From Octopus bimaculoides (Eukaryota): a stretch of 55,823 nt of DNA. Where the stretch lies: NCBI RefSeq assembly GCF_001194135.2, contig NC_068983.1, forward strand, positions 161,635,818-161,691,640, given 5' to 3'. A model generated the notes under the pieces. It ran no database searches. It worked only from the letters and a program-made list of their open reading frames with translations, and had not been told where the DNA came from. The first letter of the stretch is position 1. Each line of letters opens with the position of its first letter. Positions 4,222 to 45,288 of the stretch are shown here, in pieces. A program made the translations under genes and the position numbers.

Positions 4222-4676
4222 ACTTCAGGTGGTGTAGATGCTAATTACATCGAAATTTGTTGTGATGACTTTCCGAAAATCCACACGAGTCTGCTTTTTT
4301 TTCAGGAAAATGGGTAATTTGTGACATTTTCTACAAATACCTTTCAGAATGTGTAAATTACGATTATATCGGAATTTATTATGGAGGAAAAAAAATCGGA
4401 AGAAAGAAATTTGGTGGGTTCTTAGTCATTGCATTCTTACACACGTCACAAAATGAAACTTACAATTTCGAAAAACAAAATCGTGTCAGAATGTGTGCGC
4501 ACTCACCATTTTCCTTTTACGTAAACGTAATTTACACACCTTGAAAGGTAATTGTAGAAAATTTCATTAAAAATACCTATTTTACTGATCTGAGGAAATA
4601 AAGCTGACTCGTGTGAACGAAACCCCTCTTTCCACCAACAGAATTTTTTTTTACAACAAATCTACAACTCTGAAGC
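4222..4676. mobile_element. Foldback/MITE relic with long imperfect inverted arms
   Basis: TTTTCTACAAATACCTTTCAGAATGTGTAAATTACG (about 4327) vs CGTAATTTACACACCTTGAAAGGTAATTGTAGAAAA (about 4526); CACACGAGTC vs GACTCGTGTG; CTTCAG...GTAGAT vs ATCTAC...CTGAAG. Confidence 0.6.
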
Positions 4677-5395
4677 GTTTTTTTTATTTTATTTTATTCT
4701 CTTACATGATTTCAGCCTTAAGGCTGTAGTCATGCTGGAGCACCATAGAAAATTTCATTTGAAAATATCCATTTGTCTGGTAGTGAAGTCTGGGTGGGGG
4801 CATGCGTGTAAGAGAGGGAATATTTTATTTGATGTATACTTCAAGATTCCTTCACTAATTTCAAAAATCAATTTATTTCTTATAAAACTTATTAAACGAA
4901 TCTGGATATAAATTTTGGTAAATTTTGGCATACCTAGACAACTGCGCCTCATCGCCTGATTTTGTTTCCCCCTAACTTCTAGAAAATGGATATTTTTAAT
5001 GAAATATTCTACAAATTCGCTCCAGATAGTGTAAATATACCCTCTTTTTATTATTTCACCTCTCAGTGATAATGTTAGATAGGGAAAATAAACTTTTATC
5101 TACTTGAAAGAAAACTAATTGCATTTCTTTGCCCTTTGATGTTTGCGAAATGAACAGCGAAATTCCTCAAAAGTGTCAGTCAGATGTGAAGTTTGGGTTA
5201 CCCCGTATGTTCTTGGGACATCCCATATACAGGCTCTGAATTCTATAGGAATTAATTCAGTATTTCATGCTCCCACTTTTACCTTTCGTAATCTCTCCTT
5301 CTAGCAGCGTCACTCTGTTGTCTTTCAGTAACTAGAACACAACCATGTTGCCGAAGATACACCAGCACATTATCTATAGGAAATGTAGAGATAAA

Positions 5396-5740
5396 CCTGT
5401 GTGTATGTGTGTGTATATATTTGTATGTGTGTGTATATATTTGTATGTGTGTGTATATATTTGTATGTGTGTGTGTATATTTGTATGTGTGTGTGTATAT
5501 TTGTATGTGTGTGTGTGTATTTGTATGTGTGTGTATGTATTTGTATGTGTGTGTGTATTTGTGTGTGCGCGTGTATGTGTGTGTGTATTTCTATTGTGTG
5601 TGTGTATGTATTTGTATGTGTGTATGTATTTGTTTGTGTGTGTTTGTATTTGTGTGTTTGTATGTGTGTGTGTGTATTTGTACACGTGTGTATGTGTATT
5701 TTTCTGTGATTGTGTGTGTGTATATCTATGTATGTGTACC
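5396..5740. repeat. Compound (TG)n-based minisatellite, roughly 20-bp unit TGTGTGTGTATATATTTGTA, decaying 3'
   Basis: Direct tandem units visible; explains the spurious Cys/Val and His/Thr ORFs. Confidence 0.9.
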
Positions 5741-5974
5741 CTACCTCCCCCACCCACCCCCGTTCACACCTTCTATGCTCTCTCTCTTCCCTACTGAGGT
5801 AGCCATGTACCCTCTTCACCGCAAGATGTCTGTTTCTGATCCCTCCAGTCACATTCTAACCTCTCTTGCACAAAACCACCTTCCTCACTACTACTCCCCT
5901 CCCCCCCACTCGAGTGAGGCGTGGGGGGNNNNNNNNNNNNGGGGGGGGGGGGGGTCTTGTCTTTTAAAGTATTT

Positions 5975-6178
5975 GGTGACCTCACTGCTGCTGGTGTCAC
6001 ATAAAAAGTGTCCAGTACATCCTGTAGAGCAGTTGACCTTGGGAAGGGCATCCAGACTTGAAACTATGCCAAAACAGACACTAGAGTTTGATGCAGTCTT
6101 CTGACTTGCCAGCTCTTGTCAAACTGTCCAACCCATGCCAGCATGGAAAACAGACTTTAAATGATGATGATGATGATA
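5975..6178 (+). mobile_element. RTE LINE 3' end (5'-truncated)
   Basis: GGAAGGGCATCCAG ... CCAACCCATGCCAGCATGGAA ... (GAT)n tail, shared with more than 20 copies. Confidence 0.75.
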
Positions 6179-6999
6179 ATGCTAGTTGTTTCCTTTTTAT
6201 CTTGAAATTCTTCTTTAGCCAACAGAATTGACTTTTATTAGACAAACACTACTATTTTTTAGTAATATATATTAAACAACTGCTATTTATAGCAATATCT
6301 ATTAGACTATTATTATGGTAATATATATTAAAGATTAATTATTATAGTGAAATACATTAGACCCTTTTCATAGTGGTATATATTAGACAATGCCATTTCA
6401 AATGCAAGCCTAAACATTTTTCTATTCTATTTTCACATTGTTGATTAGATTTTGCATAAATATTGCAGAGAACAAATTTATAATGTACCAAATGACCACT
6501 TGAGTCAGCAATTTGTATCCGGTTACAGCAATGTATGTGTGTATGTGTAAGGGTACACCTAACTGCCTCAGTCTACCTTATCTAATTTAGTAATACAAGT
6601 TTCATAATTCATTGGTGTACACCCAGCAACGATTATCACAGTGACTCGGCGTATTTCAAACAGTCCTGTGAATGTAAAGAGCATTGGGAGGGAATTAACA
6701 TGTATCTCACTTTGTAGAATTTAACTGAATTGATCCTATAGGACAAGCTGCCTGTCCAGGGGATAGGCAGCTTGTCCTACCACATCTATAACAAAATAGA
6801 AATGGGCACCAGCAGTGTGGGTCCTTATTTGGAAATTACCATTTTGCTTTGATAATGTTCATTAAAGGAAAAACTCGGATAACCATTATAAGAAACTGCT
6901 TTGAAATGTATTTTATTCCCAAAAACTGCATTGACAAATATATTCTGATTTGTTAGATAATTCTCATTGTATATAAAATACACAATGTGTTACTATTCT

Positions 7000-7546
7000 A
7001 TGTTTCTGAGATGAGGAATTATGTACATTATTTACAATGGATAGATAGGTATCCTCATCTTGTTTGTTACCACATTTGGCTGATGTACTCTCCAACCTTC
7101 ATCAGGTGTTCTGGTGGAATTTCGAACCCAACCCTTTATTTGACTATTGGGGTACTCTGTTCTCATTCTTGCTGATGTTATTTTTTTGTAGATATCAATT
7201 TCCAAGTCCCTGTCTTGGATTGAACTCAGTATCCGAGGGTTAGTAACGCGAGCTCTTATCCACTTCATATAGCTGCCATATAGCGTAGTGGATAAGAGTG
7301 TAGGCTACTAGCCTTCGGATTCTGAGTTCAATCTGAACCGGGGACTTGGAAAATACCTACAAAAAAAAAACATCAGCAAAAAGAATACCTTAGGAATGAG
7401 AACAGAATACCCCATTAGTGAAATAAAGGGTTGGGTTTGAAATTCCACCAGACCACCTGATGAAGGCTGGAGAGTACATCAGCCAAAGCATTGTGGTAAC
7501 AATAAACAAGGTGAGGACACTTGTCCGGCCATTGTAAATAATGTAC
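7000..7546. mobile_element. Palindromic (head-to-head) dimer of tRNA-headed, Penelope-associated hammerhead element, locus A
   Basis: GTACATTATTTACAATGG (7023-7040) mirrored at 7529-7546; arms are reverse complements about a centre near 7270; CTGATGA motif on each arm. Confidence 0.75.
7452..7497 (+). ncRNA. Degenerate minimal hammerhead ribozyme motif
   Basis: ACCAC-CUGAUGA-A-GGCUG-loop-CAGCC-AAAG-CAUU-GUGGU; stems I and II pair, but the GAAA core is mutated. Confidence 0.5.
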
Positions 7547-8365: not shown

Positions 8366-8578
8366 AGCTTATGTATGTCCTCAGCAGTTACAGCCCATGT
8401 TTCACTGCCATGTAGCATGGTTGTTCGTACGCATGCGTCATACAGTCTGCCTTTTACTCTGAGTGAGAGTCCCTTTGTCGCCAGCAGGGGTAAGAGCTCT
8501 CTAAACTTTGCCCAGGCTATTCTTATTCTAGCAGCTACACTTTCAGCGCACCCACCCCCACTACTAACTTGTTCGCCC
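8366..8578 (-). mobile_element. RTE-clade LINE reverse-transcriptase fragment (post-catalytic region)
   Basis: Stop-free GEQVSSGGGCAESVAARIRIAWAKFRELLPLLATKGLSLRVKGRLYDACVRTTMLHGSETW, matching the RTE motif ARIxxAWxxF...KGRLYxxxVxxxxLxGSETW; runs into a gap. Confidence 0.85.
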
Positions 8579-10270: not shown

Positions 10271-10453
10271 GATGCCCTTCCTAATGCCATACTTAAAAAT
10301 GCACAGCATTTTGTCTAGCTTCTACTGTTTCTATCTTTTACCATTCTTAACTGTAGAATCTTAATGGTTAAAGTATACCAAGAAGTCTGAGATAAAATTC
10401 CATGCTTTTAGTTGTATCTTCTAAATGACTTTTTTTTAAATTTTATTACAGCT

Positions 10454-11083
10454 ATGGCATCAGGAATAACTGAAGAACAACAGGCCATACTGAATGATCT
10501 CTACCTAAGACAACTTAACTTGCCAGATGCACTTACATTGGATAATATCATTGAGAACTTTTCTATGCTAAATCTAACATCTCTTTCAGATGTCTGTAAG
10601 GTGTGCTACAGTAATTCTACCTCTGTTCACTACCGGCCATGCTGCAATTTCCTGGTCTGTTCTTCGTGCTTAACACGTTACCTGTCTGAGAAAGTTCAGT
10701 TAGGAATTGTTAATATAAAATGTCTTAACATTTGTGAGTGCTACATCAACCAAGACGATATCATGGCTTACTTACCATCATCTTTGAAAGAGAAATTCAA
10801 CAAGTTTCTGGTTGACGCTAATAAGGATCCTTGTGTTAAAACCTGTCCAAACTGTTGTTCCATTATCTCAATTGACAAATCTCAAATGAAGCATAAAAAA
10901 TGCAAAAAAGGTCTGAAGGTTGTTTGTTCCACTTGTTCAACTGCAATATGTTTCCCCTGTCAAGCACAATGGCACGAAGGAATTACTTGCAAACAATTTC
11001 AGAAAGGAGACAAAATGGTCTCAATTTGGGCTAAAAATTACCAAAATGGTCAGCTTAATGCACAACAATGTCCAAAATGCAAG
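10454..11083 (+). CDS. RNF217: RBR-type E3 ubiquitin ligase RNF217-like, coding exon 1 (RING1, IBR, start of RING2); 210 codons
   Basis: Acceptor AG at 10450-10451, ATG at 10454, donor GT at 11084 (phase 0). CKVC..PCC..CSSC..C (RING1); CPNC..CSTC..CFPC..WHEGITC (IBR); CPKCK. Confidence 0.92.
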
Positions 11084-11123
11084 GTAGGAAATCTTTGATT
11101 TTTATTATTGACTTCTTCATTGT

Positions 11124-12824: not shown

Positions 12825-12975
12825 GACAGGCTTCTTTCAGTTTCTGTCTACCAAATCCACTCACAAGGCTTTGGTCGGCCCAAGGCTATAGTAGAAGACA
12901 CTTGCCCAAGGTGCCACGCAGTGGGACTGAACCCGGAACCATGTGGTTGGTAAGCAAGTTACTTACCACACAACC
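12545..12975 (-). mobile_element. tRNA-derived SINE family 1, full length with internal (AT)n
   Basis: Reverse complement of the 647-1320 element without the MITE. Confidence 0.85.
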
Positions 12976-13323
12976 ACTCCTACTGTATATATTTTTTTAT
13001 TATTTTCATAATTTGTATATATTTATTTTATTATAAATGCAAAACAACACTACAGAGTTTAAACTTATGTCGAGGAATCGACATAAGTTTAAATAATAAA
13101 CCGCAATAGGTGAATTGCGATATGGCGAAGGATTACTGTATTTTTAATCCCTTCTGCAGAGAGCAGAATGAGAACAGTGTACACCCATGGATCAAATAAA
13201 GAGTTAGGTTTGAAATTCTAATACAACAAACGAGTTTAACCCAAGACACCTGAAAAAGGCTGGAGCACATAATAGACAAAACATAGCGAAAGCAACAATC
13301 AAGATGGAGTCACCACACAATTA

Positions 13324-14736: not shown

Positions 14737-15495
14737 GGCACAGGAGTGGCTGTGTGGTAAGTAGCTTGCTTACCAGCCACATGGTTCCAGGTTCAGTCCC
14801 ACTGCGTGGCACCTTGGGCAGGTGTTTTCTAATATAGCCTGACCAAGGCCTTGTGAATGGATTTGGTAGATGGAAACTGAAAGAAGCCCATCATATATAT
14901 GTATGTATATATANNNNNNNNNNNNNNNNNNNNNNNNNNNNNNNNNNNNNNNNNNNNNNNNNNNNNNNNNNNNNNNNNNNNNNNNNNNNNNNNNNNNNNN
15001 NNNNNNNNNNNNNNNNNNNNNNNNNNNNNNNNNNNNNNNNNNNNNNNNNNNNNNNNNNNNNNNNNNNNNNNNNNNNNNNNNNNNNNNNNNNNNNNNNNNN
15101 NNNNNNNNNNNNNNNNNNNNNNNNNNNNNNNNNNNNNNNNNNNNNNNNNNNNNNNNNNNNNNNNNNNNNNNNNNNNNNNNNNNNNNNNNNNNNNNNNNNN
15201 NNNNNNNNNNNNNNNNNNNNNNNNNNNNNNNNNNNNNNNNNNNNNNNNNNNNNNNNNNNNNNNNNNNNNNNNNNNNNNNNNNNNNNCCCCCCCCCCCCCC
15301 CCACACACACACACACAACATCGCTTGACAACTGATGCTGGTGTGTTTACATCCCCGTAACTTAGCAGTTTGACATAAGAGACCGATAGAATAAGTACTA
15401 GGCTTACAAAGAAATAAGTCCTGGAGTCGATTTCCTTGACTAAAGTCAGAGCTCCAGCATGGCCACAGTCAAAATGACTGAAACAAGAAAAAGAA
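14737..15495 (+). mobile_element. SINE family 1 spanning an assembly gap
   Basis: Head CACAGGAGTGGCTGTGTGGTAAG and 3' end CAGTCAAAATGACTGAAACAAG flank the N-run. Confidence 0.75.
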
Positions 15496-15547
15496 ACAAG
15501 TATATGATATTCACACACACACACACCTTTTTTTTTTCTTTTTTCAG

Positions 15548-15749
15548 ATTTTCATCCAACGTTCCACTGGCTGTGATCAAATGTCTTGTAAGAAATGTGA
15601 TACCAATTTCTGCTATCTTTGTGGAGATAAATTTCGTGGAATTAAATTTTTTGGTGATCATTTTAGCAAATTAAGTGTATTTGGTTGCAAATACCATTTC
15701 CTCCCACAAAAAAATATCACCAGGAAATTAATTCGAGGAACTTTATTTG
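15548..15749 (+). CDS. RNF217: RNF217-like coding exon 2 (RING2/Rcat and RNF217-type post-RING segment)
   Basis: TTTTCAG|ATT...TTT G|GTAAGT; IFIQRSTGCDQMSCKKCDTNFCYLCGDKFRGIKFFGDHFSKLSVFGCKYHFLPQKNITRKLIRGTLF, matching the recalled RNF217 motif FFGDHxSxLSxFGCKY. Confidence 0.92.
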
Positions 15750-17080
15750 GTAAGTAAAACCCATGATTATTCCATAACATAAACTTTAGAATGGAATCAT
15801 TTATTGGAATTTATCAGAACAATTAGCAGCACATTTTGATTTAATTTTTTTCTTTTTTTTTACTCTAACAAAAGTAATTCTTGTAAGGAAGCCCAGAAAA
15901 TTATTAAAACAAATTCAGGAAAAGATTAATTTTTATTTTATCCAGAAAGAATAAAAGACTCGACTTAGAATGATTTGGATGCAGAGCAATGCAACTAGTT
16001 ATGGTAAAATAGCTGGCCCAGTGAATGAACAATTTCTACAGTTTTTTTAGATATTATTCTTAGATTCCGATATTATTTTCAACTATTGGTTATGCAGATT
16101 CCTCATTGTTATCCTTCTCAACAGACAGAGGATGGGCAGAAAATTATTGCTCTATGAGCTGACAAGACTTAAACCAAGATTTTTATGGATCCATAGTTTG
16201 TATCTTGTCACTGAAGTGTCACTGCATCCATGGCTGTTTGTTGGTTTGGTTCACATTAACAGACACATCTCATATTACTGGCTTCAAAGACTGAGTTCAA
16301 GGGCTCCTTAGAGAATGAAGTGATTTGCAGCCCAAGGAAGGCAAAGTTTTTCATGATAAACAAAAACCCCAATAATAAGGGATCTAATCTCTTGTTTAAC
16401 CAATATTTTAGTGGAAGCAGTAGAAGACCCAAAGATACATAGTTGCAATTGTAAGTTCTATACCTCCATGAGAGAGTAAATTTAATCTGATCTGTCAGTC
16501 ACAATTAATCCCATTTTATACCATCTTTCAATAAATACTTGAAGCAAACATGTGGTAATGCTTCTCCAACTGGTGTTGGTGCCATGTAAAAGGCACCCAG
16601 CACACTCTGTAAAGTGGTTGGCATTAGGAAGAAATCAAGCCAAAACTGACTATAGAACCTGGAGCAGTTCCTGTCCATTGTGGCCTGACTTTTCATCTGA
16701 TGTCACTTTGTCCAAGGGCTTTTGGTCCAACAACTTTTTATCTGATGATCTTTTTGTCCAATTTTAAATAAACTCTTTAGAAAACAAGGTGAACGTCAAA
16801 ATCAAATAATCATTGAGAATTTTATTGATAGGGTTTGTCGTTGGACCAAAAGATGTGGACTAAAAGACGTTTGACGAAAAGACATTTGACAGTGACATTG
16901 GATGAAAAGATGTAGCACTCCTATCCATCTGTCCAACCCATGCCAGCATGGAAAGCAGACATTAAATGTTGATGGTGATGAAACGCCGTAAAAGTACAAA
17001 CTATGAAAATATTTTCCCAATTCTACAATTCAATATTATAACAATTTGATCGAAATAAATTTGTTCTTCTTTGTCTACAG

Positions 17081-17242
17081 GTGGAAAGTTGCTGGCTTCA
17101 ATTATGCTTGGTAGCTTGGCTGTTGGGGTTGGTGGCGCTCTTGTAGGATTAGGGACTGTCTTCCTCCCAGTTTATGGAAGTGTCTGCCTGTATCGACGCT
17201 TGAAGTATCAAAAAAAGGTCTTAAATAAATACAGAATTAACT
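17081..17242 (+). CDS. RNF217: RNF217-like coding exon 3 (hydrophobic transmembrane segment and basic flank)
   Basis: TCTACAG|GT phase 1; GKLLASIMLGSLAVGVGGALVGLGTVFLPVYGSVCLYRRLKYQKK; donor GTAAGT at 17243. Confidence 0.88.
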
Positions 17243-17544
17243 GTAAGTAGACTGATTAATTTGATTGTTACATCCCCGTCCCTTGTGAGTATCCCTGGCA
17301 CTTTTCCACCATTACTATCCTGTTGTCTCCCACTCTCTCTCTCTCTCTCTGTTTCTGTTTTCATTCCCGATCTCTCTCTCCTCTCCTCTCCGGTCAGGTA
17401 ACCTTGTACCCCCCTCTACAGCAAGACACCTGTTTCTGTCTCTCTCTGCCTCACTATAACCTTTCATCATCTGACACAAGATCACCTCCTCCAATGCCCC
17501 CTCACCTTCAAAAGATTTGTCTTGCAAAGGTACTTGGTGACCCT

Positions 17545-19087: not shown

Positions 19088-20114
19088 CATCTGCACTATT
19101 GAGGTTGCCGTGCAGCTCACGGGACGATGAACCCTGGGGTAAGTAAGGGATCATCTTCATGTTAGCGAGTAAGGGATTAAATTGTGAGGAGTTGGGGGTC
19201 AAAGCAGGTTTTTTAAAAAACATTCAGCTTATCAAATAAACTAAATCTTGTTTACAAAAATTTGTAATTATTAATTTAACCGGAGTTTAGAATTTCGTGA
19301 AACCTGTCTTTGACACTAAAATTGGAATTCTCTGACTTGGTGCGTTTCTATAGAATCTAAAATGAAGACAATTTGTGTCGAGTTTAACTTTTTAGTAGTT
19401 ATTTCTTTATTGCCCAGAAGGGGTTAAACATAGAGGGGACAAACAAGGACAAAGAATTAAGTCGAGTACATCGATCCCCAGTGCATAACTGGTACTTATT
19501 TAATCGACCCCCAAAAGAATGAAAGGCAAAGTCGACCTCGGCGGAATTTGAACTCAGAACAATGGCAGATGAAATACTGCTAAGCATTTTGCCCGGCATG
19601 CTAACGATTCTGCCAACTCGTCAAATGTAGTGCGTAATTTATTCATATTGCTTTGGATTAATCTGGGATTATCTCATAGCTTCAAGATTTTGATGATGTG
19701 ACTGTTTATTTTTAGAACAATATTGTACAGGGTCGGTGTGAGAGTCTGGATCTGCCCAGTTTCAGCATAAAACAGGTAAAATATTTTGGCCAGATTTGAC
19801 CAGTTTAAATGCTAAAGGGTTAAGAATTCTATGGATGGTTTTTTGTGTTTGTTTTATGTCCATTTTTCTACATTCTTCCATGTTGGCATGGATTAAACAA
19901 ATACAAATTTATCAACATATTGTTTTGCAACCAGAAACTCTTTCTGTTGCTGATCCTGTTTTTCAAATAAAGGAGATTCCATTCTATTTCCACCATTATT
20001 TTGTTCCTCAAAAAAAGATGTGAAATCTTTTTTTTTTTAATAACACTTTTTATATTAAATTTATTAATTTTTTATTTGTCATTGTTTAATTTTATTCTTT
20101 TATTTATGCCATAG

Positions 20115-20446
20115 ATTCCAACAACAGTTTCGATGACCTCCAACTCTACTTTGCCAGACCACACAAACTAATATTAGACGAAAACATTGATTTTATCCAC
20201 AATTATCCTTCAAAACAAACAGATAATTCTTCAGACATAAAACCTGAAGGAATATATAGCCTACCAAGCACTTTGTTTCAGCTTGAAGAGGACTCCGATC
20301 TTGGTCATTCTAGTATGCTGTCTGTCTGCCACAGCTGTGAGTCAATAGCATCAAATTCTAACACGTGTTTACATTCGGACTCTGATGAGGATTCCATTTT
20401 TTCAGCCTTGTCTAGTAGTGTTTTAGACTTGCAGACAAATATTTAA
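20115..20446 (+). CDS. RNF217: RNF217-like terminal coding exon (110-aa Ser/Asp-rich tail)
   Basis: Long pyrimidine tract plus CATAG| acceptor; phase 1 matches the previous donor; 109 open codons to TAA at 20444-20446. Confidence 0.72.
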
Positions 20447-21056: not shown

Positions 21057-21921
21057 ACAAGACAACCATTCCACATTTGTTGCCTTATTCAAATGGAATA
21101 TTGTGTCTGGTCATAGAATTGGAAACATTTCAATATTTTTTTTTCTTTGCTTCTGAAGTCATTTTATTTTCTCTTCCTTTCTATTTATGAATCCTCGTTC
21201 CTGACTCAACATCCCCATGGATGTTCACTATTTTTATAAAATAATTTATATTTTATCCATCTTAATGCGGGTTCCCCATTTATTCTGGGGTAAGGAATTT
21301 TTTACCAATGCTGAACTTAAAAGATTATGATTCTACATTAATATTAATAAATTCCTAATTTTATTTCTCTTCTGAGACTGAGCAAAATACCACTCCCAAC
21401 ATATGAATCAGCTCTTCTTATTCCTTTTTAAAATATTTCTCTAGGCCTGAAAGCTCTATTGTAGCTTATTGTTTTCGGTACAGTTGACTTTTTGGTGCCT
21501 TCTAACAAAATGAAGTAATTTCAAGTTACCAAACTTATAGGAGCTGCTAAAATATTGAGGTTTATCTTCTTTAATAAATCCATTTCTAAACCAAGTTAAA
21601 TCTTTAAGGAACTGTTCCTCATAAACCAGTCCATATCCAATATACTCCCAGCCAATAACATTTTTTGCATTTTCTGTCCAAATGAAAGTATCCATCAAAA
21701 TCTATTTTGTTTTCGTATCATTTTGTTGGACAAATTGTCCAATACTTTCCAACCAGTAAAAGACATTCAAATATTTTATATTAAATGTTATAGAAAAGTT
21801 AATAATCCAGAACTCGCCTTCTTAAAAAGAACCCTTCTAATAATGTTTCAGTTTGAGATAGATACATCATCGGAACATTATTTACATTTGACGGATATTT
21901 GTCCTCATCTTGTTTGTTGGT

Positions 21922-21967
21922 AACACAACGTTTCGGCTGATATACCCTCCAGCCATCATCAGGTGTC
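21922..21967 (-). ncRNA. Minimal type I hammerhead ribozyme motif (best preserved copy)
   Basis: GACAC-CUGAUGA-U-GGCUG-GAGGGUAUAU-CAGCC-GAAA-CGUU-GUGUU: complete core, 5-bp stems I and II, palindromic AACGUU stem III. Confidence 0.7.
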
Positions 21968-22079
21968 TTGGGGGAAATTTCAAACCTGGGTTCTCATTCC
22001 TGAGGTATTTTTCGATGTTATTATTATTCAGGTCACTGCCTGAAATCGAAAAATACCTTAGGATTCGAAATTTCCCCAA

Positions 22080-22125
22080 GACACCTGATGAAGGCCAGAG
22101 GGTATATCAGCCGAAACATTGTGTT
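22080..22125 (+). ncRNA. Hammerhead motif, partly decayed
   Basis: GACAC-CUGAUGA-A-GGCCA..CAGCC-GAAA-CAUU-GUGUU; stem II and stem III substitutions. Confidence 0.5.
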
Positions 22126-24999
22126 AACAACAAACAAGATGAGAACAAATATCCATTGAATGTAAATAATGTACATAATTCCTCATCTTGTAAATATAGA
22201 ACTGTAACATCATAGGAAGTTGAGGTATGACTGGGATAAATCTTTAAGCAAGGATATTGACAAAGCAGCAGCTCTTAACATTTTCAGGATGACCCAATGG
22301 TTGATTGTGATGTTTAGAATTTCAGTTTGGTTTCTTCTCGACTTGAACTTTCAACTCTTCCTTTTATTCATATCATCATTAAGTCTGAATTTTGTTTATT
22401 AATTTATATGAGAGAGAGATGGCAGAAAATGGAATTAATGACATTCTTTATTCACTAGAATTGTTTCTCCACATTCTCACACCTGTAGTTCATAGGTGAG
22501 ATGTTGATTTTAGAAAATGAGATTCACAACATTATTTATCATTTGGCTATTTATATAAACTCTAGATACAGAATTCCTGATGTATATCCAATTGCGGGAG
22601 TATTTCTACTGTATGATGACATCAAATAGCCAATAACTGTGGACAAGCTTTGCATAGCATTCTATAGGGCTTTTGCCTCAATGTATATAATCTATATATA
22701 TTCTCACCACCCACAAAATCCCTCAAAGGCATGTCCTGACACTTCTTTGCCATCTCTCTCACCCTGCTTTCCCTTCCAACTGGGTAATCCATGTATCTAT
22801 AGCAAGACCCCTATCTCTGTCCCTTTATATCTTTAACCTCTCAACTGGCACAAAGCTGCCCCACTAATACTTCTCCCCACTCCCATTTCAAGAGTTGGCA
22901 TTTACATAAGGGAGAAAGAAAGCCATCACCACAACAAGCTATTACAGTTTTCAGTGTTTGATTCATTTCATTTTTCCCCCCTCTTATCTTTCACTGCTAC
23001 CCCCTCAACTAACACTTGTCACAACTTACTCTGCCATGTCTTCCTTTCTCCCTTGCCATTCCGTGTCATTTCCACCATCACAATAACAATAGACGTCTAC
23101 AGTTCTCAGTTTTTCACTTGCAAAACCTGTAAAATTTCCACAAATTTCACTGGTTGAAATTATTCCTGCTTTCAGAACAATTGCTTTGTGTCAAAGACAA
23201 TCTGATTGTTTGAAAACAAGAGAACAACTGCCTTCTACAGTTCTTTCTGCCTCAATAAGCACAGCATTTGACCTACCTTGTCCCCAGCAGAACAAAATAC
23301 CTGTCCTGCTCTTGCTAGAAATTGATCTCGTTTTGCTGTCTCAAATCTCTCAAGAAGTGGAAATAATTTTTATAAATGAAGAATTTATCTTAAGCATTGG
23401 CAGTTGACACAGATGTATAAATCATACGCACAAATGTATATCTTTTATGTTTTTTTTCTTTATATACCCTTATATATGTCTTTGTTCAAATACATACCAC
23501 TGACCAATTTCTCTTGCTTTTCTTAATTCATTTCATTTCTGCAAACTACCTTTGACATAAATGTCTTCTACCTTGTGTGTGTGTGTTGTACATATGTTTT
23601 CACCATATATATTGACTATAGAAAATAGTTTCATATTGAGGCATAAAAAAAAGACAAAAAAATGGGTATTAGTACCCATTTTTCTATTTTGGCTTTACAT
23701 GCCCCAATATTAGGCAATTTTCTATTGTCAACATGTACAGTACAAAATTTTCACTCGTTTGAGAAGTTAAGGAATTGAACAGGTAAAGCACAGAATATGA
23801 TTGTTTCATGCTAAACCACGAGTTGTATGGTGACGGTCAACTTATCAAAATTTCCTTTGATTTCAATATGAGACAAAGTGTGTATCTTACAATGTTAATA
23901 AACTCTTTTATTCGTATTTTGTCATCTAAACTAGCTACATACATTCTTGAAGCTTACTAACTTCCTACACTTGGATTGTACTTGCCTATTACTTTATATA
24001 TATATATATATATATATACTACCTAAGCCAACTGATATAGATGAAAAAAGCTCTTAAATGACACTGAAAATTAGCCCTGGGCCCCAACAATAGTTGTGGC
24101 CTAAACTACTAGGCCCTAGCTCTACCACAATATATGGTTTCAGCTCCTCTGTTTAGCTTGGCCCCAACCAAACAGATGTAGCCACAAACCCCCAGACTGA
24201 TAGTCTAGGCCTCAGCTTCACCAGCCTAAGCCCTCCCTTGGTCTTCATAACAGCCAAACCTACATACATGCACTTATATATGCATGCATACATACATACA
24301 CATATGTATATATACACACATGCATATATCAATATATGTATATGCCTCTTAACCCTTATACCTTTGAATGTATACACATACATGCATACCAACATACATA
24401 CACATATACACAAACATCTAACGAACAATTCTCCATTTATATTTTTAAAAAAACAAGTGGAAATGGTATCCAGATGACTGCTTTATATTCAGGACCAAAA
24501 AAAAAAGACTTAGGAATCTTTCACTCACTTTTAAGTAATTTACATACCTCAATAAAATTCACCACGGAACAACACACAAAGGAATTACCATTTTTAGATA
24601 TACTTCTAATTAAAGAAAATAACACCATAAAAATAGATTTCTCCTACAAACCTACAGACACACACCAATATTTGAACTTTCATTCCTTCCTCCCATACCA
24701 AAAGAAACATACCCTTTAATATGGCAAAATGAATTTGCACTATAATAATAGATGCAGAAGTAAAAGATCACAGGAATTAGAAATATTTCTAAAAAAAAAA
24801 ACACAAGAATAGACAAGTAGTTTAATTAACACAGCAATCACCAAAGCGAAAAACATCACAACTACAGACCTCAGAGGAAAATGAACACACAAGCATTATT
24901 TTTGTCATCATCCACAACCCAAGAAATTACGACATCATCAATATTGCAAAAAGATACCTTCCAATTCTTCAACAATCATCAAGAATGAACAAATTAATA

Positions 25000-25348
25000 A
25001 CACATTATTTACATTTGACAGACATGTCCTCATCTTGTTTGTTGTTAACATGTTTCAGTTGTTATACCCTCCAGCCTTCATCAGGTGTCTTGGGGAAATT
25101 GCAAACCTGGGTTCTCATTCCTAAGGTATTTTTCAATGTTATTAGTGATTAAGAGTACTAACCCCAAGATTCTGAGTTTGATTCCAGGCAGTGACCTGAA
25201 TAATAATAATAATATCAAAAAATACCTTAGGAATGAGAACCCAGGTTCGAAATTTCCCCAAGACACCTGAAGAAGGCTGGAGGGTATATCAGCCGAAACA
25301 TTGTGTTTCGTCAAATATAAATAATATACATAATTCCTCATCTCTTAA
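25000..25348. mobile_element. Palindromic hammerhead element, locus C
   Basis: Truncated minus arm about 25000-25140; plus arm with tRNA-like head remnant (GAGTTTGATTCC) through the family 3' end. Confidence 0.8.
25262..25307 (+). ncRNA. Hammerhead motif with CUGAAGA core
   Basis: GACAC-CUGAAGA-A-GGCUG-loop-CAGCC-GAAA-CAUU-GUGUU; the change falls at the variable N7 position; stem III has G>A. Confidence 0.55.
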
Positions 25349-26285
25349 ATATAGAACTAAATTAAAAACAGATTCAAAAATGATTTATAGCAGACATCAA
25401 ACACCCAACCTAAAAAGAAACCAAGGTTCAAGCACCATTGATATAGATGACTTCTGCCATCCGCTGACATAGACAATAATGGACCCAGCTCCATCATCAT
25501 GTATGATCTAAACTCTCTACTTATATTAAAATATAGAAACTAGCTCCATAAAATAAGGATGGCAGAAATGCTCTTCTGACAACTTTTGAACCAACTCCAC
25601 CAATATAGTTCACCAATCCCCCAAAAGATGGCCTAAGGCTTCCACTATCATAGGCAATCTAGCCCCTACTTGCACTTAAGCTCTTGAGTGTCATTGACAA
25701 CCTGGTCCCCAGCTCCATAGCTATATATAACTTAAGCCCGCAACTAACAGTGATAAATTTAGCCTCAGCTCCAGCTGTTAAAGATGACCCGAGCCCTTCC
25801 CTATCATTGTTATCATGGGCCCTAGATCCATGATAGATAAATGAGCAAAGACCTTCACCTCAATTTCATATTCAAAGCCGCAGCTCCAATGACATTGACA
25901 GCCCAAGCCTTCCTCCGATGTTATCAACAAGGTATTTGCACCACCAACACAGATATGGATAGCATTGTAAATAGTCTTTGTAACTATACCATGTCTCAAA
26001 GACAGAGAGTGTCTTGTAGACATTTTGGGGCAGCTGCTGTTGATGTGGATATCTTCCAGAACTGACATTTCCTATCCCAACATGGGAGATTTGTTAGTAT
26101 CTTTGTCTCTTATCAGGTATTTAGTAGCTATCTTTTGTTCCTGGTTAGTAAAGGCATATTCCAGGTGTGATGTAATGTATCTATTGCAGGGCCAGGAGAG
26201 ATTACTCTTCTTGTCAATACTGTTATTCTCTAGTTTTGCATTGCTTTCTGCTGCTATGATGCTTGTTTCTCCTCGAAGTTCCTGT

Positions 26286-35867: not shown

Positions 35868-36390
35868 TCTTTTATTTGTTTCAGTCATTTGACTGTGGCA
35901 ATGCTGGAGCACCACCTTTAATCGAGCAAATCGACCCCCAGGACTTATTCTTTCTAAGCCTAGTACTTATTCAGTTGGTCTCTTTTGCCAAACTGCTAAG
36001 TTACGGGGACCTAAACACACCAACATCGTTTGTCAAGTGACATTGGGGGGACAAATACAGACACACAAACACATACATACATAAATACTGGTGTTAGGAA
36101 GCGCATCCAGCCGTAGAAACTCTGCCAGATCAGATTGGAGTCTGGTGTAGCCATCTGGTTCGCCAGTCTCCAGTCAAATTGTCCAACCCATGCTAGCATG
36201 GAAAGCAGACGTTAAATGATGATAATGATGACGATATGTAACAGTCTTCTTTCAGTTTCTGTCTATCAAATCCATTCACAAGGCTTTGGTCAGCCTGAAG
36301 CTATAAGAGAAGACACTTGCCAAAGGTGCCACACAGTGGGACTGAACCCGGAACCATGTGGCTGGTAAGCAAGCTACAGTCACTCCTACG
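35868..36390 (-). mobile_element. SINE family 1 interrupted by a plus-strand RTE 3' end (36085-36232)
   Basis: Both halves align to 12545-12975. Confidence 0.75.
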
Positions 36391-36499
36391 ATCTACTTTT
36401 CATTAATTTACTCCTGAATTTTAAATGTAGGGCCTGTGAAGACTGGTAGGTTTATGTGGAGAAAAGAATTATTGCAATAAGAGGTTGATTACATTATGT

Positions 36500-36737
36500 A
36501 CATCATTTACATTTGACGAATATTTGTCCTCATCTTGTTTATTGCTAACACGTTTCGGCTGATATACCCTCCAGCCTTCATCAGGTGTCTTGGGGAAATT
36601 TCGAACCTGGGTTCTCATTCCTGAGGTATTTTTCGATATTATTATTATTCAGGTCACTGCTTGGAATCGAACTCAGAATCTTGGGGTTAGTAGCCTGCAC
36701 TCTTAACCACTACGCCATATGCCTGTGGGCATATGGC
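36500..36737 (-). mobile_element. tRNA-headed hammerhead element with intact Pol III boxes, locus D
   Basis: A box TGGCGTAGTGG (36707-36717 rc), B box GAGTTCGATTCC (36663-36674 rc), (AAT)n spacer, hammerhead; palindromic head junction GCCATATGC-CTGTGG-GCATATGGC. Confidence 0.8.
36547..36589 (-). ncRNA. Hammerhead motif with intact core and 3-nt deletion at the stem III/I junction
   Basis: GACAC-CUGAUGA-A-GGCUG-loop-CAGCC-GAAA-C-GUGUU. Confidence 0.55.
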
Positions 36738-39700
36738 AAGACAACTGAGGTTGATTAGTGCACATCACTCCATAAGGAGCATAAGACCAGTTACTTGGTT
36801 TCTTGGTGCATATATTCCTCCTCCTGGACAGGATGCTGATCCATCGCAGGATTATTCCTTTTTTTCCAGCTGAGTGGACTGGAGTAACGTGAAATGAAGT
36901 GTTTTGCTCAAGAACCCAACACATCACCCAGTTCAGGAATTGAAACTACAGTCTTATGACGATGAGTCCAGCTACCTAGCCACTAAGCCATGTGCCTCCA
37001 CAATAAGTAGAAATAGCTTTAATTTGTTGAGCCGTACAAAGTCTTTGAATGGAAGAAACGAAGATATGTCTTGGAATTCTTTTTCTAATGGGAGATGTGC
37101 AACTTCAAATTGAAGGAGACACCTGAGGCACAAGTTCAGCCATGATAAGGAAACCAATGCTCAGGAATAAATATCTTGTAAATATAAATGAAAACATCTA
37201 TGTGTAATAAACTTACCTGTGTTCAACCTACCTGGGCAGGTCAAAGTGATAAAGACAACAGGTGAAAAAATTAACAACAAATGTAAAAACCACATTCACA
37301 ATATACACCAATGATTGTTATACTGTATCAGCAAATTTCATCCAAATTCATGCAAAAATTTACATTTCTATGATTTGTTCCTTTTACACTGACCCAACTG
37401 CCATTTCATCAAAACTGATTCTAACAGAATTGGGAGATTTAAAGAAAGTAGCACAAAACTTAAGAGTTTGGTTTAGGAAAAAATAACTTCTGCTTTGTGT
37501 AGGATTATTTTGAGGTGGGTTCTTTCCAGCTAAAGTTTTACCATTTTCAAAGCAAGTGTTCCAGATTAAGTTAATCAATAATCAGACAACATTTTTGAGT
37601 TTTACACAGCATGAGGAATTGCAGAACATTGAACAACTTCCTTCAACTGTTGGAGAGCGATGAATAAAGATTGACATGACTTGAATGATAGATCCAAGTT
37701 TGCAAGAATTGTGATCAGGAATTTGTAAACTACACATTGTTTATTTTGAATATGTATTGCTTCCTGAATTTATCTCTCAATTAAGATGTGTCCTACTTCA
37801 TTCTCCAACTATTCCACTTCTATATAAATACCCAGTTAATTGGCCAATGAAGAGACAGAAAGAAGCATGTGAAAAAACATTAGAATGACTAATATTAACC
37901 AACATGAGGGGGGAGAGGGGGAGGAAGAGTTCAATGGAAGTTTGTTCAGCAGAAGTGGAGGAACTCAGTTGAGAGAGAGAAAGAGAGAGACCGTATTTAC
38001 AAGGGAAACCTATTCAAGAAAAGACGTTAAATGAATAGGGATTATTTGTCAAGTAGACACACCTGGAATTACCTGATCAAAGTTAAAAAAAGAAACTTTA
38101 ATCCAGTAATTTATCACTGATATAAATGATTTGGGTCAAGACAGAATAAAATAAATTATATATTCTAAATGTGTACTGTATAACTTTTTTCATCACATGC
38201 ACACATACGCATACACACACATACAGTTAATGCATATCACATATATACATAAATATCATCATCGTTTCAGTATCCAATTTTCTATGCTTGCATGGGTCGA
38301 ATGAGATTCAATGAAGCAGATTTTGAGGGACTGAATGCCCTTCCCCTTGTCAACCCTCAAAGTAAGGTAATACTTTTTCATGGCCAGACATATTTTCACA
38401 GAAGACAGGAAAAGAAGGACACTGTTTGTGTAATGGAGATGTTTTTTTACAATAATGGCTCCATGTCAAAATGAGGGGGACACAAAAATACACCTCCATA
38501 CACACACTATAAAGTAATAAATTAAATTTTTGTATAAACAACTCTAAATAGAACTAATTGCAGAAGAATTTACAATTTGGTTTTTTGAAAATGTTTACAA
38601 AATGTAAGAGGAGACAACTAAAATTTGTTCCCTTGAATATTTGAAGGAAGGAATAATTCTAAAGTAAGGTAAAATGGAACCATACACAACAACGCCATTA
38701 TTAATAAAAGGAAAAAAACTATACCAAAAATGTCTCCTCTCTTCATTTTTCACTCTTCAATAAGAATTTTCAACAAGAAACAGAAAAAAAAAAACTTAGA
38801 AGTGATTCCCTCCCTTTAAGCACTCTCCACTGCCAATATGTTCCAGCTTCCAGCAAACAGAGCAATTCTATTATATTCATAATTATGAATTGAGAAACAT
38901 TTGGTGGGTTAAAATACAGATATAACAAAGAAAGCTTGGAGTATTATTGCTTTTGTTGATAGCAGAGATTCTCTGTCTCGTTACGAAAGAAAAGTCGATG
39001 GTAAGGAAGACAGATGAGAAAGACAAGAAGCAAAAGAATGTTAAAATGGCAAAGAAAGAGAAGTTTTAAGAAGATGTAAGAAGAAATGAGTGTAAATGAG
39101 GATGAACGCAAGTAATTTGACCAGGTAACCAAGTATTATCAGGGTTCAGGTGAGTTTAATGTTAAGAAAATGTTAATAGTGGAGGTCAATTAGAAGAAAA
39201 AAATCTCAAGAAACCAAGAATTGTTTGAAGTAAAGTTGAATATTTGATCATCCAGGGTGTAAAATAGGGAGGGACACAACTATAGTTAAGTATATTTATT
39301 TATTCAAGAGATGTAGCATGGAAAAGAGATCACTGTTTTGATATGGAGTGACAGCACTAAGCAGTGAGGTGTATAAATATAAACTTGTTACCAGTTCAGA
39401 TCTGTTTGAGGCATAAACCTGTAAAAAAAAGCCATTCACTGTGTTTTTGCCATGGAGAAAATTTCTCTCTACACACAAATAGGTGTGAGTACAGTGAGTC
39501 AGTTTGCAGCATCACCTGACCAGACTTTGGGATGCATGCATTTTGGAGTGGATATCTTCTCTACAGCAACAGAGACCAGAAAGACAGACGCTGGGAACTG
39601 ACATGAGGGACAGGTCCCTCTTGTGTTTTGGTCCACACTGTAAAGTGGTTGGCGTTTGAAAGGGCATCCAGCTGTAAGAACCATGCCAAAACTGACCTCG

Positions 39701-44882: not shown

Positions 44883-44957
44883 CAAGATGACTAATGAATG
44901 ATGAGATGCTGAGACTAATTCAGCCAATGCAAACACGAACAAACAGACTTGATGATA

Positions 44958-45167: not shown

Positions 45168-45288
45168 GGCTTGATGATGATTTATTAAACAAACTAGGGA
45201 AATTTCAATCGGAGTTGGAAGGGACGGCCTACTGACACAGACCACCTCTAGTTGTAAATTTACCAAAAGAAAACAAGGTTGAACTTAC

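What the first reader, a model, noticed from the sequence alone, without database searches (positions are those of the whole stretch)
21877..22205. Locus B: best-preserved hammerhead, downstream of the RNF217 stop codon
Seen: minus-strand 21922-21967 has all core nucleotides, both 5-bp stems and palindromic AACGUU; predicted cleavage is after GUU. The locus lies 1.4 kb past the RNF217 stop, so a long 3'UTR would contain the palindrome as a hairpin of about 100 bp plus the weaker plus-strand motif. Inference: best test substrate for activity, and a possible influence on mRNA 3' end or stability.
Basis: partly seen in the sequence, partly recalled or inferred. Interest (0 to 1): 0.72.

Follow-up and report, generated by a model that had tools for sequence, protein, structure and literature searches.

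The report
Hammerhead ribozyme inside a retrotransposon palindrome
The hammerhead motif is real and is the only intact copy in the window, but it lies in a head-to-head double insertion of a short Penelope-type retrotransposon, so it is most likely a mobile-element ribozyme relic and not a regulator of the neighbouring RNF217-like gene.

Summary
Minus strand 21922-21967 carries a complete minimal type-I hammerhead: CUGAUGA, GAAA, a 5-bp helix I, a 5-6-bp helix II, no helix III and a palindromic ACGU. Cleavage is predicted after U at 21927. A descriptor scan finds it as the only complete motif in the 55.8-kb window (about 0.003 expected by chance).

It is not a gene-specific element. Locus B (21875-22206) is one insertion flanked by an 11-bp target-site duplication. 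It consists of two inverted, 5'-truncated copies of a roughly 230-nt interspersed repeat found at six loci in the window. Full-length copies begin with tRNA-like A and B boxes. Each of the four inverted pairs carries a 30-36-nt "tail" at one outer end only. Inverted 5'-truncated copies plus a one-sided 30-40-bp tail are the published insertion signature of Penelope-like elements, whose repeats carry this kind of dimer-dependent hammerhead.

The intact ribozyme is antisense to the RNF217-like gene. Any transcript crossing the locus folds into a hairpin of roughly 130-140 bp (about -190 to -200 kcal/mol) that buries the motif. The "1.4 kb past the stop" figure rests on an unverified fourth exon. 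Verdict: a new copy of a known kind. It is a reasonable in vitro substrate, and a regulatory role is unsupported.

The parts
21864..21874 (.). Left target-site duplication, ACATCATCGGA
   Evidence: Matches 22207-22217 (ACATCATAGGA) at 10 of 11 positions, directly abutting both ends of the insertion.
21875..22047 (-). Left arm. A 5'-truncated copy of the repeat unit whose sense strand is the minus strand. It has the short type of 3' end (...AAATAATGT at 21875). Its 5' end falls inside the tRNA-like head, at the B-box region.
   Evidence: Alignment to the full-length copy C and to the other copies. BLAST gives 91% identity to 36490-36671 and 92% to 44957-45097.
21922..21967 (-). Intact minimal type-I hammerhead: helix I 21967-21963 with 21926-21922; CUGAUGA 21962-21956; bulged U 21955; helix II 21954-21949 with 21940-21935; GAAA 21934-21931; ACGU 21931-21928; cleavage predicted 3' of U17 at 21927.
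   Evidence: It is the only complete descriptor hit in the window. The minimum-energy fold of the isolated segment forms helices I and II.
22048..22173 (+). Right arm. A more 5'-truncated inverted copy whose sense strand is the plus strand, with an internal deletion of about 13 nt.
22080..22125 (+). Degraded hammerhead copy. Helix II reads GGCCAG/CAGCC with two mismatches. ACGU has become ACAU, a CpG-to-CpA change, so the helix III palindrome is lost.
   Evidence: It fails the descriptor, and its minimum-energy fold does not form helix II.
22174..22206 (+). One-sided 33-nt 'tail' (CATAATTCCTCATCTTGTAAATATAGAACTGTA), present only at the right end. Together with 22134-22145 it closes a short 3'-terminal stem-loop.
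   Evidence: The tail motif occurs exactly four times in the window, once per inverted pair (A, B, D, E), against 0.01 expected. The stem-loop folds at -14 kcal/mol, z = -2.8. Inverted pair I4 covers the same stem.
22207..22217 (.). Right target-site duplication, ACATCATAGGA

Best explanation
Locus B is a single retrotransposition event of a short, non-autonomous, hammerhead-bearing retroelement that was integrated by Penelope-like element (PLE) machinery.

The repeat unit is about 230 nt and has five parts:
- a 5' head with tRNA-like RNA polymerase III A and B boxes;
- an A/T-rich linker;
- a body;
- a minimal type-I hammerhead about 75 nt from the 3' end;
- a 3' stem-loop region with two alternative ends (short, or short plus a tail of about 33 nt).

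Inferred integration mechanism, taken from published PLE biochemistry. Both strands of the target are cut about 11 bp apart, and both 3'-OH ends prime reverse transcription of the element RNA from one of two adjacent internal start sites. The two cDNAs run towards each other and are joined at variably truncated 5' ends. The result is a head-to-head inverted pair with constant outer ends, a variable centre, a tail on one side and an 11-bp target-site duplication.

The hammerhead belongs to the element. In active source copies it presumably processes element transcripts, acting as a dimer through the ACGU palindrome. At this locus it is a passenger. One arm happens to have kept the CpG-containing ACGU and an intact helix II, while the sister arm and most other copies have decayed.

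Shown here: the motif, the family, the inverted architecture, the tail and the target-site duplications.
Inferred: PLE mobilisation, Pol III transcription, ribozyme activity, and the absence of any role for RNF217.
For: 1. [quoted passage not shown] That paper also reports dual min-HHRs 100-700 bp apart on opposite strands.
2. It is a repeat family. There are nine arms at six loci in the window.
3. Four of the six loci (A 7023-7546, B, D 44957-45169, E 25002-25358) are head-to-head inverted pairs with constant outer (3') ends and variable inner (5') junctions.
4. The tail of roughly 30-36 nt is present at exactly one outer end of each pair.
5. Target-site duplications bracket whole pairs. B is 10 of 11, D is CTTGATGAT at 9 of 9, E is 10 of 11, and the single copy C is GAGGTTGATTA at 11 of 11.
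6. The literature describes this signature as typical of, and in the case of the tail unique to, PLEs. An inverted 5'-truncated copy adjacent to the unit and a 30-40-bp tail at only one end are described in PMC8557442. The tail corresponds to the stretch between two internal RT start sites, and the PLE protein cleaves and extends both DNA strands (PMC11167929).
7. Full-length copies (C and both arms of A) start within about 7 nt of an exact A box (TGGCGTAGTGG). A 10-of-11 B box (AGTTCGATTCC) lies at the tRNA-like offset of 44 nt.
8. PLEs exist in this genome. A PLE thumb-domain fragment lies at 24336-25001(+). It is homologous to a contig that encodes RT plus GIY-YIG with the Cys pair between GIY and YIG.
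9. CpG observed/expected is 0.38 with a TpG/CpA excess. This explains why most copies read ACAU.
Against: - No autonomous PLE sharing this 3' module was found, so the partner is inferred from insertion architecture only.
- The hammerhead sits in a SINE-like unit, not in the pLTR of an ORF-bearing PLE.
- Rfam's curated hammerhead models do not score the motif even at E <= 10 on an 81-nt query.
- The tRNA-like head is not recognised by ARAGORN, even at 70% thresholds, or by the Rfam tRNA model.
- Covariation among the nine in-window copies is uninformative. There is one compensatory change, and 109-238 of 500 shuffles do as well.
- No further copies could be retrieved from the available collections.
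- Activity is untested. Published PLE min-HHRs cleave poorly in vitro, and HHR mutants did not affect PLE insertion in vitro.
Confidence: 0.8

Rival explanations
1. A gene-specific regulatory ribozyme or hairpin in a long RNF217 3'UTR, comparable to the Clec2 3'UTR hammerhead, that sets the mRNA 3' end or its stability.
For: The locus lies downstream of the RNF217-like coding sequence on the same contig. A plus-strand read-through RNA would carry a hairpin of roughly 130-140 bp.
Against: - The intact motif is antisense to the gene, and the sense-strand copy fails the descriptor.
- The locus is a transposable-element insertion with its own target-site duplication, one of six such loci in the window.
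- Four polyadenylation hexamers precede it.
- The stop-codon position is unverified.
- The hairpin would out-compete the ribozyme fold.
Confidence: 0.04
2. A MITE or foldback DNA transposon with long terminal inverted repeats, in which the hammerhead-like motif is incidental.
For: Loci A, B, D and E are palindromes with target-site duplications. That is how a MITE finder would call them.
Against: - The arms are copies of a directional unit with a defined tRNA-like 5' head and a defined 3' end.
- Copy C is a single, full-length, non-palindromic unit with a perfect 11-bp target-site duplication.
- The centres vary by 5' truncation while the outer ends stay constant.
- The termini are systematically asymmetric, with a one-sided tail.
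- The motif carries non-trivial PLE min-HHR features.
Confidence: 0.05
3. An ordinary LINE-mobilised tRNA-derived SINE whose inverted copies arose by L1-style twin priming or by chance nested insertions, and which happens to contain a hammerhead.
For: A and B boxes with tRNA-like spacing sit at the 5' end. Target-site duplications are present. 5' truncation is typical of target-primed reverse transcription.
Against: - No poly(A) or simple-repeat 3' tail is present at any copy end.
- Twin priming yields non-overlapping inverted segments, whereas here both arms duplicate the same 3' region.
- Four of six loci are inverted, each within a single target-site duplication.
- The one-sided 30-36-nt tail is reported as PLE-specific.
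Confidence: 0.08
4. Whatever its origin, the locus now acts mainly as a source of long double-stranded RNA (an ADAR substrate or an endogenous siRNA hairpin) when it is transcribed through. This does not exclude the best explanation.
For: Both strands fold into a near-continuous hairpin: -186.8 kcal/mol (z = -24) and -201.5 kcal/mol (z = -24). Rfam microRNA-precursor models give sub-threshold hairpin-shape matches, 58.8 bits against a gathering score of 100.
Against: There is no evidence of transcription. The microRNA matches are far below threshold and occur on both strands, as expected for any inverted repeat. Arm mismatches show no sign of selection for pairing.
Confidence: 0.15

Closest known systems
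Minimal hammerheads (min-HHR) of metazoan Penelope-like elements (Cervera & De la Pena 2014, PMC4209133; Lunse et al. 2017, cited in PMC6765202)
   Same: - Type I topology and the CUGANGA/GAAA core.
- A short helix I (5 bp) and a longer helix II that starts G10.1-C11.1.
- An extra unpaired nucleotide after A9.
- No helix III and a palindromic 15.2/16.2, which implies action as a dimer.
- Massive dispersed copy number.
- Pairs on opposite strands 100-700 bp apart.
   Different: Here the motif is carried by a unit of about 230 nt with a tRNA-like head and no ORF, not by the pLTR of an RT/EN-encoding PLE. Activity was not tested.
SMalpha / Sjalpha SINE-like retroposons of schistosomes (Ferbeyre 1998 and Laha 2000, as summarised in PMC6765202 and PMC8490949)
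   Same: A short non-autonomous retroposon that combines a Pol III-type promoter with a hammerhead that needs a second copy. It is highly repeated.
   Different: The schistosome elements carry canonical type I hammerheads with loop-loop contacts and a short helix III, and they occur largely in direct tandem arrays. The present family has a min-HHR without helix III and occurs as dispersed single or head-to-head inverted insertions.
Metazoan non-LTR retrozymes (PMC7229834; bioRxiv 10.64898/2026.07.22.740005)
   Same: Small, non-coding, hammerhead-bearing elements proposed to be non-autonomous derivatives mobilised by PLEs.
   Different: Retrozymes are defined by direct tandem repeats that yield circular RNAs after double self-cleavage. 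No direct tandem copies exist here. An inverted pair cannot release a unit by two sense cleavages.
PLE insertion architecture: pLTR, inverted 5'-truncated copy, 30-40-bp tail (PMC8557442; PMC11167929)
   Same: An inverted 5'-truncated copy, a one-sided tail of roughly 30-36 nt, a target-site duplication, and one copy (A) abutting a (TG)n(TA)n microsatellite.
   Different: There is no RT/GIY-YIG ORF between the repeats. Both arms are the short element itself.
Discontinuous hammerhead in rodent Clec2 3'UTRs (Martick et al. 2008, cited in PMC4209133)
   Same: A hammerhead-type motif downstream of a coding region.
   Different: The Clec2 ribozyme is in the mRNA sense and is conserved with the gene. 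Here the intact motif is antisense and belongs to a transposable element.

Membership tests
PLE-type minimal hammerhead (min-HHR) | Conserved core CUGANGA ... GAAA with a U16.1-H17 cleavage site | tested here: met
   CUGAUGA at 21962-21956, GAAA at 21934-21931, and G-U-U with H17 = U at 21927.
PLE-type minimal hammerhead (min-HHR) | Helix I of 4-5 bp and a helix II of at least 4 bp beginning G10.1-C11.1 | tested here: met
   GACAC/GUGUU (5 bp) and GGCUGG/UCAGCC (5 Watson-Crick pairs plus 1 G.U). Both helices appear in the minimum-energy fold and pass the descriptor.
PLE-type minimal hammerhead (min-HHR) | [quoted passage not shown] | tested here: met
   U at 21955, and A in the other copies. 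The descriptor hit requires bulge = 1.
PLE-type minimal hammerhead (min-HHR) | No helix III, and a palindromic 15.2/16.2 that allows a dimeric helix III | tested here: met
   A15.1-C-G-U16.1 (ACGU) with no loop. It is retained only in this copy, and the others read ACAU or carry deletions.
PLE-type minimal hammerhead (min-HHR) | Self-cleavage as a dimer | not testable with these tools
   This needs an in vitro assay. The double-hammerhead is pseudoknotted for co-folding software, so one search is uninformative on this point.
PLE-type minimal hammerhead (min-HHR) | Location in the pLTR of an RT/GIY-YIG element | tested here: not met
   No ORF lies between or next to the arms. The unit is about 230 nt with a tRNA-like head. 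Only an unrelated PLE thumb fragment lies at 24336-25001.
Rfam hammerhead families (Hammerhead_1, _3, _II, HH9, HH10) | Match to the curated covariance model | tested here: not met
   No hammerhead hit at gathering threshold, at E <= 10 on 1.3 kb, or at E <= 10 on 81 nt. This is expected, because these models include helix III.
PLE-mediated insertion | Inverted 5'-truncated copy adjacent to the unit, with constant 3' ends and a variable inner junction | tested here: met
   Loci A, B, D and E.
PLE-mediated insertion | 30-40-bp tail at only one end of the insertion | tested here: met
   A tail of 33 nt at locus B and roughly 30-36 nt at the others sits at one end of each of the four pairs. The motif occurs exactly 4 times against 0.01 expected.
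PLE-mediated insertion | Target-site duplication around the whole compound insertion | tested here: met
   B is 10 of 11, D is 9 of 9, E is 10 of 11 and C is 11 of 11. A is ambiguous because it sits in a microsatellite.
PLE-mediated insertion | An autonomous PLE in the same genome sharing the 3' module | tested here: inconclusive
   A PLE-derived thumb fragment is present, but no PLE 3' end is available for comparison. No more sequence from this genome could be retrieved.
tRNA-derived SINE | Internal Pol III A and B boxes with tRNA-like spacing at the 5' end | tested here: met
   The A box TGGCGTAGTGG is exact at 36717(-) and reads TAGCGTAGTGG at 7281(+). The B box AGTTCGATTCC matches 10 of 11 at an offset of 44 nt.
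tRNA-derived SINE | Recognisable tRNA cloverleaf or homology | tested here: not met
   ARAGORN finds nothing even at 70% thresholds, and the Rfam tRNA model gives no hit at E <= 1.
tRNA-derived SINE | LINE-type 3' end (poly(A), a simple repeat, or a LINE-derived tail) | tested here: not met
   The ends read ...AAATAATGTA, with or without the tail, and abut the target-site duplication directly.
Metazoan non-LTR retrozyme | Direct tandem repeats with one hammerhead per unit | tested here: not met
   No direct repeat of the unit at any locus (families D1/D2 only) and no tandem array.
3'UTR regulatory hammerhead (Clec2-like) | An intact ribozyme in the sense strand of the mRNA | tested here: not met
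   The intact motif is on the minus strand and the gene is on the plus strand.

The most novel reading that the evidence does not exclude
The family is a true SINE-PLE partnership. It would be a Pol III-transcribed, tRNA-headed SINE that has captured the 3' module of a Penelope-like element (min-HHR, RT-entry stem-loop and tail) and is integrated by PLE RT/EN acting on both target strands. This would routinely create long perfect-hairpin loci inside and next to genes. If so, it would be a clean natural system for studying PLE template recognition and the role, if any, of the hammerhead. It would also be a systematic source of dsRNA-forming 3'UTR and intron insertions in this genome.
Probability: 0.5. 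Interest if true: 0.5.

Novelty: new member of a known kind. Interest (0 to 1): 0.3.

Why it matters
For the hammerhead itself the result is ordinary. Dimer-dependent minimal hammerheads are known to be scattered in thousands of copies through PLE-containing animal genomes. This copy shows that a neat motif beside a gene can be a transposon relic.

The useful by-products are these:
- A well-defined, still intact substrate (21900-21990, minus strand) with naturally decayed sister copies that can serve as controls.
- A small family in which the PLE insertion signature (inverted pair, one-sided tail, 11-bp duplication) can be read on a 230-nt element with a Pol III-type head. This could help identify what PLE reverse transcriptase recognises.
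- A caution for annotators: such loci will be miscalled as MITEs or microRNA hairpins.

Tried and rejected
- Rfam at the gathering threshold and at permissive E-values gave no hammerhead family. It returned only sub-threshold microRNA and snoRNA matches on both strands, which I reject as hairpin-shape or CUGAUGA-box artefacts.
- Covariation analysis on the nine in-window copies is not informative. There is one compensatory pair, and the shuffles do as well.
- More copies were sought in metagenome contigs with two patterns, in viral contigs, and in the protein database using the spurious ORF 21910-22212. All returned nothing.
- RNAcofold of two copies predicts an extended duplex, not the double hammerhead. 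The real dimer is pseudoknotted in that representation, so I did not use this result.
- The tRNA identity of the 5' head was tested with ARAGORN at lowered thresholds and with the Rfam tRNA model. Both were negative, so only the promoter boxes are claimed.
- Exon 4 of the RNF217-like gene was compared with the C-terminal extensions of homologues. There is no significant similarity, so the stop at 20444 stays a model.
- Pfam scans of the PLE-like ORF fragment and of its homologues returned nothing with this Pfam copy. The PLE assignment instead rests on the precomputed PF26215 hits and on the RT and GIY-YIG motifs read directly in L005.
- The organism could not be identified. The closest exon-1 homologue comes from unnamed Logan runs, and a paper search for the run accession found nothing.
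Full report
**1. The observation**

Reading both strands shows on the minus strand: 5'-GACAC-CUGAUGA-U-GGCUGG-AGGGUAUA-UCAGCC-GAAA-C-G-U-U-GUGUU-3'. This spans 21967 down to 21922.

- All invariant hammerhead core positions are present (C3-A9 and G12-A14, with A15.1-U16.1).
- Helix I has 5 bp (GACAC/GUGUU, the outermost pair a G.U).
- Helix II has 5 Watson-Crick pairs plus a G.U and begins with G10.1-C11.1.
- One unpaired nucleotide follows A9.
- There is no helix III. A15.1-C15.2-G16.2-U16.1 reads ACGU, a palindrome that can pair only with a second copy.
- The predicted cut is 3' of U17 at 21927.

A loose core pattern occurs five times in the window against 0.28 expected. A full descriptor requires helices I and II of at least 4 bp, CUGANGA, GAAA, complementary 15.2/16.2, U16.1 and H17. 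It gives exactly one hit on both strands of the 55.8-kb window, 21923-21966(-), against 0.003 expected from 300 shuffles. Dropping the palindrome requirement adds only 25263-25306(+) and 45005-45048(-). 'Best-preserved' is therefore correct.

The inverted repeat is also real. The arms 21875-21987 and 22060-22172 are 88% complementary over 113 nt, and an inner 19-nt pair is 95% complementary. Curated Rfam hammerhead models do not score the motif at any threshold. This is expected, because those models include helix III.

**2. Gene context**

The plus strand carries an RNF217-like RBR gene.

- Exon 1 (10412-11095) holds RING1 and IBR. It is 84% identical to a Logan protein.
- A RING2 exon lies within ORF 15482-15754 (weak Pfam IBR match, E = 6.7e-05, 23.3 bits against a 24.3-bit cutoff).
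- A transmembrane exon lies at about 17081-17247.
- Spliced together, these three exons match many full-length homologues across residues 1 to about 280.

Exon 3 ends in ...AAC T|GTAAGTAG. An in-frame TAG at 17248-17250 therefore overlaps a consensus GTAAGT donor. Splicing to the AG at 20096 keeps the frame open to a TAA at 20444-20446. Many homologues have long C-terminal extensions after the membrane helix. The putative exon-4 peptide, however, has no detectable similarity to them.

The alternative model places the stop 4.6 kb upstream. Four AATAAA/ATTAAA hexamers lie between 20446 and 21875.

**3. What the locus is**

The sequence belongs to an interspersed repeat family. BLAST of the region against the window finds these copies:

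- A: 6988-7129 and 7433-7546
- F: 13165-13306, diverged
- B: 21875-22206
- E: 25002-25358
- C: 36490-36721
- D: 44956-45167

Aligning all arms in the hammerhead-sense orientation reveals a directional unit.

*5' end.* Copy C and both arms of locus A begin at the same point, a few nucleotides upstream of an exact Pol III A box (TGGCGTAGTGG). A 10-of-11 B box (AGTTCGATTCC) follows 44 nt later, which is the spacing found in a tRNA. ARAGORN and the Rfam tRNA model do not recognise a cloverleaf. I therefore claim only a tRNA-like promoter head.

*Middle and 3' end.* After the head come an (AAT)n/A-rich linker, a body, the hammerhead and a 3' region. The unit is about 232 nt long (C: 36492-36723).

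*Architecture of the insertions.* Four of the six loci (A, B, D, E) are head-to-head inverted pairs.

- The outer ends are constant (...CAAATGTAAATAATGTA).
- The inner junction differs at each locus. Both arms are full length in A. The truncation points in B, D and E all differ.
- One arm of every pair carries an extra tail (33 nt at locus B, roughly 30-36 nt overall; consensus CATAATTCCTCATCTYKTAAATATAGAACTGTA). The other arm never does. The tail motif occurs exactly four times in the window, against 0.01 expected.

*Target-site duplications* bracket each whole pair:

| Locus | Left copy | Right copy | Match |
|---|---|---|---|
| B | ACATCATCGGA (21864-21874) | ACATCATAGGA (22207-22217) | 10/11 |
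| D | CTTGATGAT | CTTGATGAT | 9/9 |
| E | AAATTAATAAC | AAATTAAAAAC | 10/11 |
| C (single copy) | GAGGTTGATTA | GAGGTTGATTA | 11/11 |

Each palindrome was therefore made in a single integration event.

**4. Mechanism**

This combination is the published insertion signature of Penelope-like elements.

- Craig et al. describe frequent 5' truncation, an inverted 5'-truncated copy immediately adjacent, and a 30-40-bp tail often present at only one end (PMC8557442).
- Frangieh et al. show that a purified PLE protein cleaves and extends both DNA strands. [quoted passage not shown]
- Cervera and De la Pena showed that PLE repeats carry minimal hammerheads with the non-descriptor features seen here. 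They also noted dual motifs 100-700 bp apart on opposite strands (PMC4209133).

In the present unit the short end falls in the loop of a 10-bp stem-loop in the MFE fold (ACAAGAUGAG/CUCAUCUUGU, a 12-nt complementary stretch in the family consensus; -14 kcal/mol, z = -2.8). The long end falls just after that stem-loop. This resembles the stem-loop RT entry site reported for the anole PLE.

My reading is as follows. A non-autonomous, probably Pol III-transcribed element uses PLE RT/EN. Both 3'-OH ends of an 11-bp staggered break prime cDNA synthesis. The two cDNAs meet head to head. The steps from 'PLE enzyme' onward are inference from architecture and literature. No PLE with the same 3' module could be found.

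A PLE-derived fragment does lie in the window at 24336-25001(+). It is homologous to PF26215-containing proteins and to contig L005. L005 encodes LPKIHK and RT motifs followed by IIYCATCSTCRENYIG, which is GIY-YIG with the PLE-specific Cys pair. Locus E is inserted into this fragment.

**5. State and likely function of this copy**

The genome is CpG-depleted (observed/expected 0.38, with a TpG/CpA excess). The helix III palindrome ACGU and the C11.1-G12 step are both CpG sites. Most copies read ACAU, and the A copies read CCAAA in place of CCGAAA. The left arm of B has simply escaped these changes. Its sister arm, created in the same event, has not.

Within the window there is no statistical covariation support: one compensatory pair, matched by 109-238 of 500 shuffles. 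The argument for ribozyme identity therefore rests on the motif match and not on covariation.

The whole locus folds as a hairpin of roughly 130-140 bp on either strand (-186.8 and -201.5 kcal/mol, z about -24). The isolated ribozyme segment folds at about -14 kcal/mol. Because the arms are joined 5' to 5', the sense motif always lies in the downstream arm. In neither direction is a second sense copy available in cis. Self-cleavage in situ is therefore unlikely.

Published PLE min-HHRs are weak even as engineered dimers. Ribozyme mutants did not impair PLE insertion in vitro.

**6. Rivals**

- A MITE or foldback DNA transposon is contradicted by the directional unit, the single full-length copy C, the variable centres and the one-sided tail.
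- A LINE-dependent SINE with twin priming is contradicted by the lack of any A-rich or LINE-like 3' end, and by both arms duplicating the same 3' region.
- A gene-specific 3'UTR ribozyme is contradicted by the strand, the transposon origin and the competition from the hairpin.
- A by-product role as a dsRNA source cannot be excluded. The Rfam microRNA matches (58.8 bits against a gathering score of 100, on both strands) are hairpin-shape artefacts.

**7. Comparison and novelty**

The motif passes every sequence-level criterion of the PLE min-HHR class. It fails the Rfam hammerhead models and the criterion 'in the pLTR of an ORF-bearing PLE'. The element works like the schistosome SMalpha/Sjalpha SINE-like hammerhead retroposons and like metazoan retrozymes, which are proposed non-autonomous PLE derivatives. 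It lacks their direct tandem organisation, however, and its ribozyme is the helix-III-less form.

I file it as a new member of a known kind. The tRNA-headed, PLE-integrated SINE reading is the most novel possibility that the data allow. I give it probability about 0.5.

**8. Limits**

- The organism is unidentified.
- No additional copies could be retrieved.
- Activity, transcription and the 3' ends of RNF217 transcripts are untested.

Noticed in passing
window 6988-7546; 13165-13306; 25002-25358; 36492-36746; 44957-45169: Five further loci of the same hammerhead-bearing repeat. A is a palindrome of two full-length arms, 79% self-complementary over about 524 bp, abutting a (TG)n(TA)n microsatellite. 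F is a diverged 5'-truncated copy. E and D are asymmetric inverted pairs. C is a single full-length copy with a perfect 11-bp target-site duplication.
   Followed up: yes
window 36724-36746: At the 5' junction of copy C there are 23 extra bases between the element and the target-site duplication. They include a 9-nt inverted copy of the element's own 5' terminus (GGCATATGG/CCATATGCC). This looks like a snap-back or template-switch footprint.
   Followed up: partly
window 24336-25001 (+), possibly continuing after 25369: A degenerate fragment of a Penelope-like element ORF covering the thumb/HTH_animal region (...LPFLDILLIKE...YKPTDTHQYLNFHS...). It has frameshifts and is interrupted by the locus E insertion. 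No RT core or GIY-YIG part was detected in the window.
   Followed up: partly
L005 about 4170-6330 (+), and about 8433-8456 (-): This ENA contig, fetched through a homologue, encodes a decayed canonical PLE: LPKIHK and RT motifs, a thumb region, and GIY-YIG with a Cys pair between GIY and YIG. It also has a neat hammerhead core (CUGACGA-GGGU...ACCC-GAAA) about 2 kb downstream on the opposite strand.
   Followed up: partly
window 995-1166: Head-to-head interstitial telomere-like repeats: (GTTAGG)n at 995-1074 followed by (CCCTAA)n variants at 1083-1166.
   Followed up: no
window 17240-17250 and 20090-20446: The in-frame TAG that would end the RNF217-like ORF after the transmembrane exon overlaps a consensus GTAAGT donor. 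A frame-compatible acceptor at 20096/20097 opens a 113-codon serine/aspartate-rich extension. The gene therefore has two possible C-termini.
   Followed up: partly
window 36241-36377 and at least 9 other sites (e.g. 12826-12962, 14761-14886, 42199-42327, 51471-51601, 55672-55798); A-box matches at 9545(+), 35060(-), 36990(-): At least one other abundant short interspersed repeat family, plus further tRNA-like A boxes. The window is dense in SINE-like repeats that are unrelated to the hammerhead family.
   Followed up: no
whole window: Strong CpG depletion (observed/expected 0.38) with a TpG/CpA excess (1.28 and 1.23), 37% G+C and 2,240 N in assembly gaps. This is consistent with a methylated animal genome assembled from short reads.
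   Followed up: yes
window 21934-22113, both strands; 7223-7328: Rfam plant microRNA precursor models (MIR9486, MIR447 and others) give sub-threshold hits on both strands of the palindromes. Automated pipelines could mis-annotate these loci as microRNA genes or MITEs.
   Followed up: yes
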